This document shows positions 33,812 through 36,800 of a DNA stretch of 62,030 nt, one piece after another. Numbering within the stretch: position 1 is the first letter of the stretch; every line of letters begins with the position of its first letter. This DNA is from Guillardia theta CCMP2712 (Eukaryota > Protista > Cryptophyta): contig NW_005434641.1 of assembly GCF_000315625.1 (NCBI RefSeq), positions 13,321 to 75,350 of the forward strand, written 5' to 3'. The translations under genes and the position numbers were made by a program. The notes beneath the pieces are model-generated. The model had not been told where the DNA came from. It searched no databases and saw only the letters and a program-made list of their open reading frames with translations.

Positions 33812-36800
33812 ATGGACGGCTCTGTCTGTGTAAGATGATTGCAACGTTAAACCGAAAAGGACACTGACATTGGTGAAATGATGTTCAAATTGACTATTGG
33901 GCACGCGGCATGTTGAAACAAGTCGGTGAGAAGTGATGCTGATCACTTGTGCATAAAGAATACAATGATGACGTTTTCTTTTTCGATGTTTATCAAAAAA
34001 AAAAACATGGATTGGGTGATCAGGGAGTGAGTTAAAAGCTTCTTGAGGTTCAGAACGGCTGATTGTTTGTCTGTTTGTATTTGCATTCCAGCTGGCGTCG
34101 ACATGTTGGGGATGAGCAGGGAGTGAGTTCTGAATATACAGTTTGTGACTGGTCTGACTCTGAGTGATTCACAAATATTTTGATTCCCTTGTGCTCTTCA
34201 ACATATTGGATGTGCGGGGATGAATAGCCGGTAAATTCACCCTACAACGTGCGGTTAGTCTGACTGCTCTTGCGCCTGATCTTGGGCTATGCTTTGAACT
34301 TGGGGATACATAGTGGGTGAGTTTCATATGCTATCAAGTTTTCAGAGTTATATTGAATGTTTAACATGATCTTTCACCGTCTGCTATCTTCTATTCGGCA
34401 GGCTGTAAGTCCCCTAGAAAAATCATGGCCATTGATAGACTGACGTCTTCATCGGTTTTTCGTGAATGTAACTGATATGGGTCGGGAACAAGTAGTGTGT
34501 AAGTTTGATATTCAATAGCACTTTGATCTTGCATGTCGTCTGACTTGTATGAATGCTCTGTTCCCGTCATGAAACTACAACTGGACAGCCTGTAAGCTTC
34601 ATGTGCAAGTTTCAAGGTGGTTGTCTGATACTTCCCCCTTTAACGTTTATCATCACCTCTTAAACGGAATGCACTGGGATAGTCGGTAAGTGCGACAGCT
34701 ATCATGTGAAAAAAGTATTCTGACATTATTTTCATTAACGCGATCACATGAATGTTTAGAATGTAAGCAGATTCCTATGACAAAATCTCCGATTTATTAT
34801 CTGATTTTTTTTCTGTGGAATCATGTTGGGAATAATGAGATAGTTCGTGAGTATAGTTGGATTAATGCGATGAGGTTTTGATTCATGGTTTTTCACCACT
34901 ATTTATTTGCTCTGCTCAATGATGCATCGGCATTCTACTCAGGGGGTGAGTTGATCATTGAATGCATATCCAAGGACTGGCTGCTGACGTCTTTATGATT
35001 GATGATTGCTCATGGGATGCTGGTCATTTGGGATTAACAGTGGGTAAGTATTATCGAATATTCACTTCCTATTTGCAAGGTTGACATATCGTACAGTTTG
35101 TAAGTATCATGTGCAAACATGCAATTTGTTTTTCGCTGATATGGTTCATGGCCCGTCGGGAAACGCATCACCTTCAAGTGCTGTGTAAGGATAAACTGTA
35201 TCTTTTTTTGATGTGCATCTGACACTGGGTTGTTGAATACTGTACGATGCTTTATCAAATAATAGAATGTGAGTTTTGAAATCAAAGGATATTTCTATAC
35301 CTGGCAAATAACAATTGAATCCAGTGTGCAAGGTTGCATGGATGGCCCGGTTACAATCAGGTGATCGAACGACGATGATGCCGCTCCTTGCTGATACGCT
35401 GATACTTCCTTTGCCGATAGAACGGCTGCCTCTCATGCAAGTTTCAGCTGGGGCTGAGCCAATACGCCCAGATGGCGGAGGAGGAACAGCAGAGGTGCTT
35501 ACGGGAGGAAAGGCAAGCAAGAGAACGTCAGACCAGGGAGATGATGGAGCGCGAAAGAGCGCAAGCGCAGGAGGAAAGACGGATGAAGGAGGAGGCCGAG
35601 CGCCGGAGGGCACAACAAGCGGCGCAGAAAGCCAGAGAGGAGGCCGAGCGGCAACGGGCAAGGCAAGAACAGCAGATTTTGCTACAAGCCAGGGAGGAGG
35701 AGATGCGCCGAGCCAGAGATGAAGCAAAAAAGGAACAAGAATGGGAGCGCAGAGCCAGGGAAGTGAGAGAACGCCAGGCCAGGGAGGAGGCCGAGCGCAA
35801 GGCCAGGGAGGAGGCCGAGCGCAAGGCCAGGGAGGAGGCCGGTGGACGCCAATGGAATGAAACCCTTGTCGTGGATGATGCAAATGATTTTTCATCCTCT
35901 TTGCGTTTTAGCGAGCGCGAGGCCAGGGAGGAGGCCGAGCGCAAGGCCAGGAGGAGCCGAGCGCAAGGCCAGGGAGGAGGCCGAGCGCAAGGCCAGGGAG
36001 GAGGCCGAGCGCAAGGCCAGGGAGGAGGCCGAGCGCGAGGCCAGGGAGGAGGCCGAGCGCAAGGCCAGGGAGGAGGCCGAGCGCAAGGCCAGGGAGGAGG
36101 CCGAGCGCGAGGCCAGGGAGGAGGCCGAGCGCAAGGCCAGGGAGGAGGCCGAGCGCAAGGCCAGGGAGGAGGCCGGTGGACGCCAATGGAATGAAACCCT
36201 TGTCGTGGATGATGCAAATGATTTTTCATCCTCTTTGCGTTTTAGCGTTTTCAAGTGCATCATAACAATTGGACAACAATCGAGGAAAGGGGTCATCAAG
36301 GTAGCCAAGGAGAAAGAAGCAGATGATTTGCTTCGGCACGATTGGGATGTATACAAGAAGCTTGTCAACCGAAGTTCCTCTGCTCATGACTACATCGTTG
36401 AATGCCTTCATGCAGAAGGATCTTGTGCTGGCTTCTTCGCTCTTGTCACTGAGCGTGCCAAACGATCGCTGGCAGGTTGGATGTCAGAGGCCTCGCTCAA
36501 CGCTCACAAGGCTCATCGCCAGGGGATCATAAGGCAGCTTGGCTGGATCGTAGGGTTCATGCACGAGTGCGGGTTGGTCTGGATGGGGATCAGTGCAGAC
36601 AACTTTCTGGTCTTCAGTGACTTGAGGATCAAGGCAACTAACTTCACTTACGCTGGTGAGGTTGGGTCCCTGGCAAACCACGCTGACGATGCTGCCTGCT
36701 GCTTCGTTGCTCCCGAGTTGCTCAAGGATGCAACATGCAGGCAGAGGCTCACCTTCGAGATGGACGCATGGTCCTTCGGAGTGACTGCATTCCAAGTCTT

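What the first reader, a model, noticed from the sequence alone, without database searches (positions are those of the whole stretch)
33812..35472. One-codon-per-exon gene segment: 16 consecutive micro-exons spell a Cys-rich domain
Seen: this ORF-poor, AT-richer stretch repeats AG|NNN|GT(A/G)AG about every 90 nt. Exons in order: TCG(33923) GGA(34024) GGA(34120) CCG(34228) TGG(34314) GCT(34402) TGT(34496) CCT(34589) TCG(34683) AAT(34760) TTC(34844) GGG(34943) TGG(35041) TTT(35097) TGCTGT(35179) AAT(35266); introns are 53-105 nt. Adding the first exon ATGGACGGCTCTGTCTGT (33812-33829), a 36-nt exon (35325-35360) and the exon from 35421 gives a stop-free, all phase-0 frame: MDGSVC-S-G-G-P-W-A-C-P-S-N-F-G-W-F-CC-N-CARLHGWPGYNQ-NGCLSCKFQLGLSQYAQ-MAEEEQ. 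It lands exactly in frame with ORF 35472 and has CxxC pairs (CCNC, CLSC) suggesting a Zn-binding or disulfide-rich module. About 1.35 kb of DNA encodes only 17 residues. Inference: each exon is a whole codon, so skipping any subset keeps the frame and could diversify a putative sensor domain one residue at a time. Standard gene finders and read aligners would miss this. Micro-exon genes are known in schistosomes, but I know of no description of a run of single-codon exons like this.
Basis: partly seen in the sequence, partly recalled or inferred. Interest (0 to 1): 0.95.

Follow-up and report, generated by a model that had tools for sequence, protein, structure and literature searches.

The report
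Run of one-codon exons, real
In the alga Guillardia theta, a stretch of this kinase-like gene is built from 16 tiny exons, 15 of them a single codon; RNA confirms they are spliced together, and at least 30 other immune- or death-type genes share the design, which I found described nowhere.

Summary
Window 33812-35472 holds 15 exons of 3 nt and one of 6 nt, all flanked by AG and GTRAG (14 strict sites against 0.11 in shuffles).

RNA contigs from three runs in two studies contain the triplets joined in the predicted order. The genome is Guillardia theta CCMP2712. The gene is GUITHDRAFT_108205, and its public model starts at 35472 and misses this N-terminus.

Two paralogues (contigs C60, C56) carry the same layout. 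A full-length transcript of C60 matches the genome exactly through 16 GT-AG introns, ten of its exons being 3 nt, and gives a continuous 797-aa ORF. The window peptide aligns with it (CCNC...GW.GY...GC..CK), so the array is coding.

The array is one diverged member of a genome-wide system:
- About 30 loci or more encode one N-terminal Cys-rich module.
- A hypervariable stretch is encoded codon by codon, separated by a homologous intron family of about 105 nt (at least 151 copies; 147 of 147 spacings are exactly 3 nt).
- The module is fused to Roc-COR-TIR, kinase-PARP, kinase-caspase or pseudokinase bodies.

Caveats for this copy: the assembled isoforms use a cryptic acceptor at 34092 or retain intron 15, and both break the frame. 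No exon skipping was seen. The scan had flagged similar arrays on other DNA of this genome. I found no published description.

The parts
33717..33743 (+). Inferred exon 1, 27 nt, MFCFCSGCE (M-x3-C-x2-C-x)
   Evidence: Same length and Cys spacing as exon 1 of paralogues C60 (MSRTCKACQ, spliced in transcript protein P0166) and C56 (MAGHCSDCE). Not shown spliced in this gene.
33744..33790 (+). Inferred 47-nt GC-AG intron
   Evidence: Removing it puts exon 1 in frame with exon 2. C60 has a GC-AG intron at the same place. X6 contig 33730-33829 runs through it unspliced.
33791..33829 (+).
   Evidence: 39-nt exons ending in Cys at the same position in C60, C56 and other family members. The donor at 33830 is used in an X6 contig.
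33923..33925 (+). Micro-exon TCG (S)
   Evidence: X6 contig: joint 33829 to 34092 with TCGGGA between
34024..34026 (+). Micro-exon GGA (G)
   Evidence: Same X6 joint, TCGGGA
34092..34119 (+). Extension made by a cryptic acceptor (AG 34090-34091), giving a 31-nt exon 34092-34122
   Evidence: X6 joint 33829 to 34092. It is the first AG after the CTGAT box of intron 3. It shifts the frame to a TGA after 15 codons.
34120..34122 (+). Micro-exon GGA (G)
   Evidence: Left flank of the joint 34122 to 35096 in X7 and X9. Its own predicted acceptor junction (34026 to 34120) was not seen.
34228..34230 (+). Micro-exon CCG (P)
   Evidence: First triplet of the 29 letters between 34122 and 35096 in X7 and X9, also in an X6 loose end
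34314..34316 (+). Micro-exon TGG (W)
   Evidence: In the same 29 letters; X6 joint 34230 to 34496 carries TGGGCT
34402..34404 (+). Micro-exon GCT (A)
   Evidence: Same evidence
34405..34495 (+). Intron 7, the one window intron that still matches the intron-family HMM
   Evidence: nhmmer E=7e-4 over HMM positions 1-96 in a 1.8-kb search
34496..34498 (+). Micro-exon TGT (C)
   Evidence: In the 29 letters; joints 34404 to 34496 in X6 and X7
34589..34591 (+). Micro-exon CCT (P)
   Evidence: In the 29 letters; X7 joint 34591 to 34759
34683..34685 (+). Micro-exon TCG (S)
   Evidence: In the 29 letters; X7 has TC between 34591 and 34759; X6 joint 34684 to 34759
34760..34762 (+). Micro-exon AAT (N)
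   Evidence: In the 29 letters
34844..34846 (+). Micro-exon TTC (F)
   Evidence: In the 29 letters; X6 joint 34847 to 35096
34943..34945 (+). Micro-exon GGG (G)
   Evidence: In the 29 letters; X7 loose end after 34945
35041..35043 (+). Micro-exon TGG (W)
   Evidence: End of the 29 letters; X7 loose end TGGTTTTGCTGT
35097..35099 (+). Micro-exon TTT (F)
   Evidence: X7 loose end TGGTTTTGCTGT joins it to TGCTGT
35100..35178 (+). Intron 15 (79 nt, AAG acceptor), retained in the deepest contigs
   Evidence: Piece 35096-35184 is contiguous in X6, X7 and X9; it is spliced in an X7 loose end. Retention leads to a stop.
35179..35184 (+). 6-nt exon TGCTGT (CC)
   Evidence: Joint 35184 to 35325 in three runs. 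The same 6-nt exon occurs in C60, C56 and many family loci.
35266..35268 (+). Micro-exon AAT (N)
   Evidence: AAT lies between 35184 and 35325 in X6, X7 and X9. The same AAT exon occurs in the paralogues.
35325..35360 (+). 36-nt exon CARLHGWPGYNQ
   Evidence: Pieces 35325-35358 in X7 and X9. Homologous 36-nt exons in C60 (CAKSRGWTGYDE) and C56.
35361..35420 (+). Ordinary 60-nt intron
   Evidence: GT..AG joint in three runs
35421..35740 (+). Start of the large exon (NGCLSCKFQLG...); the public model's ATG is at 35472
   Evidence: Contigs cover 35419-35740. P0001 = GUITHDRAFT_108205 starts MAEEEQ. A kinase-like domain lies downstream.

Best explanation
The stretch is the coding 5' part of the Guillardia theta gene GUITHDRAFT_108205, a coiled-coil plus kinase-like protein. 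Fourteen consecutive residues are each encoded by their own 3-nt exon. They are followed by a 6-nt exon (CC), a 3-nt exon (N) and a 36-nt exon. Together these encode a Cys-rich N-terminal module, M-x3-C-x2-C / x12-C / variable peptide / CC-N-C-x13-C-x2-C-K, which the public gene model lacks.

The spliceosome removes each short intron as its own unit (intron definition). The design that appears to allow this is inferred, not shown:
- a strong GTRAGT donor;
- a CTRAY branch box about 40 nt from the 5' end;
- a long G+T-rich tail free of AG, so the first AG after a distant branch point is the acceptor;
- as a result, the branch box of one intron lies about 60 nt from the donor of the next, although the exon between them is 3 nt.

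The array is a diverged member of a genome-wide family. About 30 loci or more carry the same module, and its variable part is written codon by codon between copies of a homologous intron of about 105 nt. Arrays grow by tandem duplication of intron-plus-codon units. They differ completely between paralogues whose flanks are 94-99% identical, so the codon-per-exon stretch behaves as a hypervariable cassette.

In this particular copy splicing is leaky. A cryptic AG at 34090 and retention of intron 15 give frame-broken RNAs.
For: Shown:
- Motif and frame.
- RNA contigs from runs X6/X7 (one sample) and X9 (another study) carry CCG TGG GCT TGT CCT TCG AAT TTC GGG TG between 34122 and 35096, TCGGGA after 33829, AAT between 35184 and 35325, and TGGTTTTGCTGT.
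- Organism and gene identity.
- Paralogues C60 and C56 have the same exon plan.
- Transcript contig L016 matches C60 exactly through 16 GT-AG introns, with ten 3-nt exons, and has a 797-aa ORF. The independent MMETSP isoform P0166 has the same peptide.
- The window peptide aligns to P0002 with score 105, against 29 +/- 5.6 for shuffles.
- A second locus (C228): transcript L043 splices 13 consecutive 3-nt exons exactly.
- Intron family: tandem 107-108-nt units, an HMM and covariance model, and at least 151 genome hits, all with E below 2e-10.
- All 147 of 147 adjacent intron pairs are 3 nt apart, with 34 codon types and no stop.
- Branch box 45 nt from the 5' end and 59 nt from the 3' end; 122 of 133 tails are free of AG against 7% expected.
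- The observed cryptic acceptor is the first AG after the box in intron 3.
- Fusion partners are Roc-COR-TIR, kinase-PARP and kinase-caspase; there are 11 Roc-COR-TIR loci.
- Hypervariability: for L031 against L035 the 900 nt downstream are 99.4% identical and the flanks 94% and 97%, while the array interior matches only at 72-80% and out of register.
- The seven intron pairs at 97% identity or more all lie within one locus and share their upstream codon; five of the seven also share the downstream codon.
Against: - No single contig runs in frame from exon 2 to the large exon of this gene. The junction 34026 to 34120 was never seen.
- The deepest contigs retain intron 15.
- The raw-read RNA run gave only 10 reads, so isoform proportions are unknown.
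- Only 1 of 17 window introns matches the family HMM. Pairwise similarity among the window introns is barely above shuffles.
- Exon 1 and the GC-AG intron are inferred from paralogues only.
- The steric role of the 59-nt tail, and any function of the variable peptide, are inference.
- No protein-level evidence exists.
Confidence: 0.85

Rival explanations
1. In this copy the array no longer makes protein. It is a decaying leader that acts as a long, heavily spliced 5' UTR with a short upstream ORF, and the protein starts at M35472 as in the public model.
For: The deepest contigs in three runs retain intron 15. One contig uses the cryptic acceptor at 34092. Both give early stops. The window introns are far more diverged than the family consensus. 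The NCBI model starts at 35472.
Against: All 18 exons are multiples of 3 and the frame stays open for 68 codons into the ORF. The conserved CC-N-C...GW.GY...GC..CK motif and the 6/3/36-nt exon plan are intact. Intron 15 is also seen spliced. The paralogue's public model misses a proven N-terminus in the same way.
Confidence: 0.2
2. This is the first reader's inference: the one-codon exons are cassette exons, and skipping subsets of them at the RNA level makes many in-frame protein variants from one gene.
For: Every exon is a whole codon, so any skip keeps the frame. The module sits on immune- or death-type proteins.
Against: Every joint seen in four loci' worth of RNA evidence keeps the exons in genomic order with none missing. 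The variants seen are intron retention and one cryptic acceptor. The data are assembled contigs, which drop rare forms, so absence is weak.
Confidence: 0.1
3. The AG-NNN-GT sites are ratchet points for stepwise (recursive) removal of one long intron, and the triplets are by-products rather than coding exons.
For: Many partly spliced intermediates occur. The site form resembles AG|GTAAGT ratchet sites (from my knowledge of Drosophila recursive splicing).
Against: The triplets remain in mature transcripts and are translated into a conserved peptide. No joint 33829 to 35325 was seen.
Confidence: 0.02
4. The motif run is a chance or compositional artefact.
For: None.
Against: 14 sites against 0.11 in shuffles; direct RNA joints.
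Confidence: 0

Closest known systems
Micro-exon genes (MEGs) of Schistosoma and other flatworms (from my knowledge; tapeworm example found)
   Same: Tandem runs of very short exons whose lengths are multiples of 3, so the frame is kept. Annotation pipelines miss them. They are associated with variable proteins.
   Different: MEG exons are 6-36 nt and make up most of a small secreted protein, and variation comes from exon skipping. Here the exons are 3 nt and form only an N-terminal variable stretch of large intracellular-type multidomain proteins. The introns are copies of one homologous repeat, and no skipping was seen.
Introners and introner-like elements (Micromonas, Aureococcus, fungi; PMC4540971, PMC3609843)
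   Same: A family of homologous spliceosomal introns present in at least 151 copies in one genome.
   Different: Introners are scattered through unrelated genes and are thought to spread by transposition. These copies sit head to tail, exactly 3 nt apart, inside one gene-module superfamily. No dispersed copies turned up; target-site duplications and terminal inverted repeats were not looked for.
Animal neuronal microexons and plant microexons (PMC8831610, PMC4674806, PMC7392893)
   Same: Exons of 1-15 nt, including 3-nt exons, can be spliced accurately and encode conserved residues, and they are widely misannotated.
   Different: Those are single exons or at most two adjacent ones (5 nt and 12 nt in rice, PMC8831610), flanked by long or ordinary unrelated introns. 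Here there are 13-16 in a row, and about 75 in one locus.
Recursive splicing ratchet sites (from my knowledge)
   Same: An acceptor is immediately followed by a donor consensus, and adjacent introns must be removed one after another.
   Different: Ratchet sites leave nothing in the mRNA. Here 3 nt stay and are translated.
Variable-plus-constant immune receptor genes such as Dscam exon clusters and lamprey VLR cassettes (from my knowledge; analogy only)
   Same: A short hypervariable segment next to near-identical constant parts, in a family with TIR, caspase, PARP and kinase domains.
   Different: There is no evidence for somatic or RNA-level diversification. The variation seen here is between germline paralogues.

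Membership tests
G. theta micro-exon-array N-terminal module (defined here from C60, C56, C228 and about 25 other loci) | 6-nt exon TGCTGT (CC), then 3-nt exon AAT (N), then a 36-nt exon C-A-x3-G-W-x-x-Y-x2, then an exon starting x-G-C-x2-C-K | tested here: met
   Window 35179-35184, 35266-35268, 35325-35360, 35421-. The same plan occurs in C60 and C56. Peptide alignment score 105 against 29 for shuffles.
G. theta micro-exon-array N-terminal module | A run of single-codon exons between a 39-nt exon ending in Cys and the CC exon | tested here: met
   14 single-codon exons, 33923-35099, after exon 33791-33829
G. theta micro-exon-array N-terminal module | 27-nt first exon M-x3-C-x2-C-x, spliced to the 39-nt exon | tested here: inconclusive
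   The sequence fits (33717-43, MFCFCSGCE) and the frame works with a 47-nt GC-AG intron. The only contig there is unspliced.
R1 intron family (about 105 nt; HMM and model from alignment A1) | Significant match to the family profile | tested here: inconclusive
   1 of 17 window introns matches (34405-34495, E=7e-4). Paralogue C56 has 6-7 matches and C60 has 2-3.
R1 intron family | Layout: CTRAY box about 40-45 nt from the donor, a long AG-free G+T-rich tail, and a GGAYAG-like end | tested here: met
   11 of the 16 introns that end at a micro-exon have the box 33-45 nt from the 5' end. 7 of those 11 have no AG before the acceptor. TGGGRAT..AG ends recur.
Schistosome-type micro-exon gene (MEG) | Most of the coding sequence is made of symmetric micro-exons of 36 nt or less | tested here: not met
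   Only 19 of about 950 codons (the 16 micro-exons of the array, plus the 36-nt exon) lie in micro-exons
Schistosome-type micro-exon gene (MEG) | Protein variants made by micro-exon skipping | tested here: not met
   No skipped form in the contigs or database isoforms. The depth is too low to exclude rare forms.
Introner / introner-like element | Many homologous intron copies in one genome | tested here: met
   At least 151 hits with E below 2e-10, and only 150 of 19,633 candidates were scored
Introner / introner-like element | Copies dispersed in unrelated genes | tested here: not met
   All listed hits lie in tandem arrays. Every array I parsed has the same ..KC|A|...|CC|N module frame.
Introner / introner-like element | Transposon marks (target-site duplication, terminal repeats) | not tested
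   Flanking triplets differ between units. No dedicated search was made.
   No Pfam hit at E up to 5. AlphaFold on the single sequence gave pLDDT 37.7. Atlas scores were 0.83 or below.

The most novel reading that the evidence does not exclude
The one-codon-per-exon layout is a built-in diversification device. Every codon is flanked by homologous introns, so any unequal exchange or conversion between introns, within an array or between paralogues, adds, removes or reshuffles single residues without ever breaking the frame. This gives a unicellular alga a family of TIR, caspase, PARP and kinase proteins with a fast-evolving, Gly/Tyr/Arg/Asp/Trp-rich recognition loop held between Cys clusters. 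RNA-level skipping could add further variants.
Probability: 0.3. Interest if true: 0.95.

Novelty: new variant of a known kind. Interest (0 to 1): 0.9.

Why it matters
It shows that a spliceosome can accurately join 13 to 16 consecutive 3-nt exons, and apparently about 75 in one locus. That is far beyond the one or two adjacent microexons described in animals and plants. It also offers a natural, repeated test bed, hundreds of near-identical units with a fixed 45/59-nt layout, for asking how intron definition copes with almost no exon.

It links a multi-copy intron family to the creation of coding sequence one residue at a time. That is a route for protein evolution and exon shuffling at single-codon resolution.

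It reveals that about 30 or more G. theta genes with immune- or death-type domains share an unannotated N-terminal module with a hypervariable part. Their public models are wrong at the 5' end, so gene finders and read aligners need micro-exon-aware modes for this lineage.

Tried and rejected
- **Raw RNA reads.** The only raw-read RNA run (X16) gave 10 reads on the stretch, so starts, strand and isoform ratios could not be measured.
- **Genome-wide motif scan.** The first scan with GTRAG donors was swamped by (GTGA)n microsatellites. Narrower patterns worked.
- **Recent tandem duplication in the window.** TRF found no repeat of about 90 nt there. Pairwise intron similarity is only marginally above shuffles.
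- **Conserved RNA structure in the intron family.** RNAalifold predicted no pairs. The GTCAG/CTGAC hairpin idea was dropped.
- **Identity of the Cys-rich module.** Pfam gave no hit at E up to 5. AlphaFold without an alignment gave pLDDT 37.7. The best Atlas feature score was 0.83. The exhaustive profile search with P0002 found no other protein covering residues 1-85.
- **Arrays outside this genome.** One metagenome scan for an intron-junction pattern gave 30 single hits. None matched the intron HMM, so they are chance.
- **Literature.** Seven searches found no description. The library lacks most subscription journals.
- **Rejected readings.** Chance, and recursive-splicing by-products.
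Full report
**1. The observation**

Each is preceded by AG and followed by GT(A/G)A(G/A), and the introns are 53-105 nt. The strict motif AG-NNN-GTRAG occurs 14 times in 33812-35472. It occurs 11 times in the other 60 kb of the + strand. In 2000 dinucleotide-preserving shuffles of the region the mean is 0.11 and the maximum 3. Splicing as proposed gives the stated stop-free peptide, in frame with the ORF at 35472.

**2. RNA evidence for this gene**

Contigs of runs X6 and X7 (one sample, 2018) and X9 (another study, 2014) were laid on 33300-35740.
- X7 (depth 204) and X9 carry a joint 34122 to 35096 with 29 letters between. These letters are micro-exons 4 to 13 concatenated (CCG TGG GCT TGT CCT TCG AAT TTC GGG TG-). 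X6 has the same string as a loose end.
- X6 joins 33829 to TCGGGA, which is exons 2 and 3 of the proposed model (its first two micro-exons).
- All three runs have AAT between 35184 and 35325, and all splice the 60-nt intron before 35421.
- An X7 contig ends in TGGTTTTGCTGT, which joins the TGG, TTT and TGCTGT exons.
- Smaller contigs are mosaics with some introns removed and others retained, in no fixed order.

So the spliceosome uses these sites, and the triplets stay in the RNA in genomic order. No joint 33829 to 35325 and no skipped triplet was seen.

There are two blemishes.
- After TCG GGA, the X6 contig uses an acceptor at 34092 instead of 34120. This gives a 31-nt exon and a stop after 15 codons.
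- The deepest contigs of all three runs keep intron 15 (35100-35178). That also leads to a stop.

The one raw-read RNA run gave only 10 reads, so proportions are unknown.

**3. Identity, and proof that such arrays are coding**

The large ORF is 100% identical to GUITHDRAFT_108205 of Guillardia theta CCMP2712. That model starts at MAEEEQ, which is window position 35472. The protein has a weak protein-kinase match.

Its only close relative in the protein collection, P0002 (797 aa, 40% identical), begins with a Cys-rich N-terminus. That N-terminus aligns with the window's micro-exon peptide: WFCCNCARLHGWPGYNQNGCLSCKFQLG against FYCCNCAKSRGWTGYDEYGCAFCKSQTG. The score is 105, against 29 +/- 5.6 for shuffles.

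P0002 proved to be the product of a G. theta paralogue on contig C60. Its 2678-nt transcript contig matches the genome exactly through 16 GT-AG introns. Its exons include ten of 3 nt, one of 6 nt (TGCTGT) and one of 36 nt. An independent MMETSP assembly (P0166) gives the same peptide, plus a 27-nt first exon joined through a GC-AG intron. The NCBI model of that gene also misses the N-terminus.

The third paralogue (C56) has the same plan. All three end the array with CC (6 nt), N (3 nt), a 36-nt exon, then the large exon.

By the same pattern, the window very likely has three further features:
- a 27-nt exon 1 at 33717-33743 (MFCFCSGCE);
- a 47-nt GC-AG intron;

This is inferred. The one contig covering that place is unspliced.

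**4. A genome-wide system**

Pattern scans of the 87-Mb assembly found further arrays on many contigs.
- On C228 the units are a recognisable tandem repeat of 107-108 nt: one codon plus an intron of about 105 nt.
- An HMM and a covariance model of this intron found at least 151 copies, all with E below 2e-10, although only 150 of 19,633 candidates were scored. They lie on about 20 contigs.
- Among loci I fetched, all 147 of 147 adjacent full-length intron matches are separated by exactly 3 nt, with 34 codon types and no stop codon. The model knows nothing about exon length, so this is an unbiased measure.
- A second transcript (L043, protein P0152) matches C228 exactly across 13 consecutive 3-nt exons.

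In the window, intron 7 still matches the HMM (E=7e-4). The other introns share only the layout and a TGGGRAT..AG end.

**5. What the arrays belong to**

Every array I parsed sits in the same frame:
- a 39-nt exon ending ...KC;
- usually a GCG (Ala) exon;
- a variable run of single codons, in some genes interrupted by one to three exons of about 87 nt of the form ATF..G..GKC..C.K...H....C;
- then the CC motif.

The bodies behind the module differ:
- Roc-COR-TIR proteins of about 1300 aa, at 11 loci;
- kinase plus PARP;
- kinase plus caspase-like peptidase;
- the pseudokinase trio that includes the window gene.

One locus (C105) has about 75 micro-exons, which spell hydrophobic, Trp/Leu-rich stretches.

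**6. Hypervariability and growth**

The paralogues L031 and L035 are 99.4% identical over the 900 nt after the array. Their flanks are 94% and 97% identical. The array interiors match only at 72-80% and out of register, and the peptides are unrelated.
- The seven intron pairs at 97% identity or more all lie within one locus and share their upstream codon; five of the seven also share the downstream codon. This shows growth by tandem duplication of intron-plus-codon blocks.
- Intron pairs at 90-97% identity share the downstream codon in only 41% of cases and the upstream codon in 23%. About 80% would be expected if codons diverged at the rate of the introns.

So the codons change faster than the introns, or they are reshuffled. 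Which process does this (selection, recombination between homologous introns, or conversion of the flanks) is not settled.

The codons are rich in Gly, Tyr, Arg, Asp, Trp, Ser and Leu, and none of the 147 is Cys.

**7. How splicing may work (inference)**

In the family the CTRAY box lies a median of 45 nt from the donor and 59 nt (interquartile range 58-60) from the acceptor. The tail between the box and the acceptor is G+T-rich. It contains no AG in 122 of 133 introns, where 7% would be expected by composition. Ordinary introns of the same genes are only 42-60 nt.

I read this as a distant branch point whose first downstream AG is taken as the acceptor. That keeps the branch-site complex of one intron about 60 nt from the donor of the next, despite the 3-nt exon.

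The window supports the rule. Intron 3 has acquired an AG at 34090, the first one after its box, and that is the cryptic acceptor seen in RNA.

No conserved RNA structure was found.

**8. Comparison and novelty**

Single 3-nt and even 1-nt exons are known in animals and plants, and two adjacent microexons have been validated in rice (PMC8831610; PMC4674806; PMC7392893). Flatworm micro-exon genes have tandem 6-36-nt exons. Introners are multi-copy introns, but dispersed ones (PMC4540971, PMC3609843).

I found no report of runs of single-codon exons, or of a tandem intron repeat with 3-nt spacing, in seven full-text searches. The library is incomplete.

Other first-stage notes of this scan flagged similar arrays elsewhere in this genome. 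I used them as leads only.

**9. Verdict**

Noticed in passing
window 35745-36175: 24-nt tandem repeats (11 copies at 35912-36175) encode an ERKAREEA-type charged helix. Two overlapping ORFs (35472-36194 and 35842-38049) read the repeat in different frames, and the public model bridges them with an intron-like skip.
   Followed up: partly
window 32209-33672 (- strand): A 487-aa ORF with a full protein-kinase domain lies head to head with the micro-exon gene. The shared upstream region holds a 19-nt tandem repeat (33643-33688).
   Followed up: partly
L011 = C105:49000-58999 (+), about 820-7400: A giant array of about 75 micro-exons (67 of 3 nt) spells hydrophobic Trp/Leu/Val-rich stretches that look like membrane segments. 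Its introns do not match the 105-nt family model.
   Followed up: partly
L024 = C116:127000-135000 (+), 2880-7311: An array of about 40 micro-exons encodes a Trp/Leu-rich peptide, with several consecutive Leu codons. It looks like recent unit duplication.
   Followed up: no
L021 = C261:37000-45000 (+): A block of five intron-plus-codon units (peptide TDAPL) is duplicated with introns at least 97% identical. This is a direct example of array growth.
   Followed up: partly
L014 = C66:306000-312000 (+), 3029-5179: Three tandem 87-90-nt exons of the C-x2-C...H...C type are interleaved with single-codon exons, so the Cys-knuckle exon is itself a repeat unit.
   Followed up: no
L017 (C60, - strand) and protein P0166: A GC-AG intron (donor GCAAGA) sits between the 27-nt first exon and the 39-nt second exon, confirmed by a transcript-derived protein. 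The window has GCAACC at the matching place.
   Followed up: yes
genome-wide, e.g. C12:382137-382443, C12:899016-899316: Long (GTGA)n and (GGGA)n microsatellites mimic AG-NNN-GTGAG and swamp naive motif scans.
   Followed up: yes
run X8: A freshwater metagenome run holds 26% of the sampled words of window 33600-36000, which is odd for a marine culture strain.
   Followed up: no
P0154 (Hanusia phi), P0163 (Rhodomonas salina): Other cryptophytes have relatives of the Roc-COR-TIR bodies (61% and 45% identity), but the database entries lack N-termini. Whether they have arrays is unknown.
   Followed up: no
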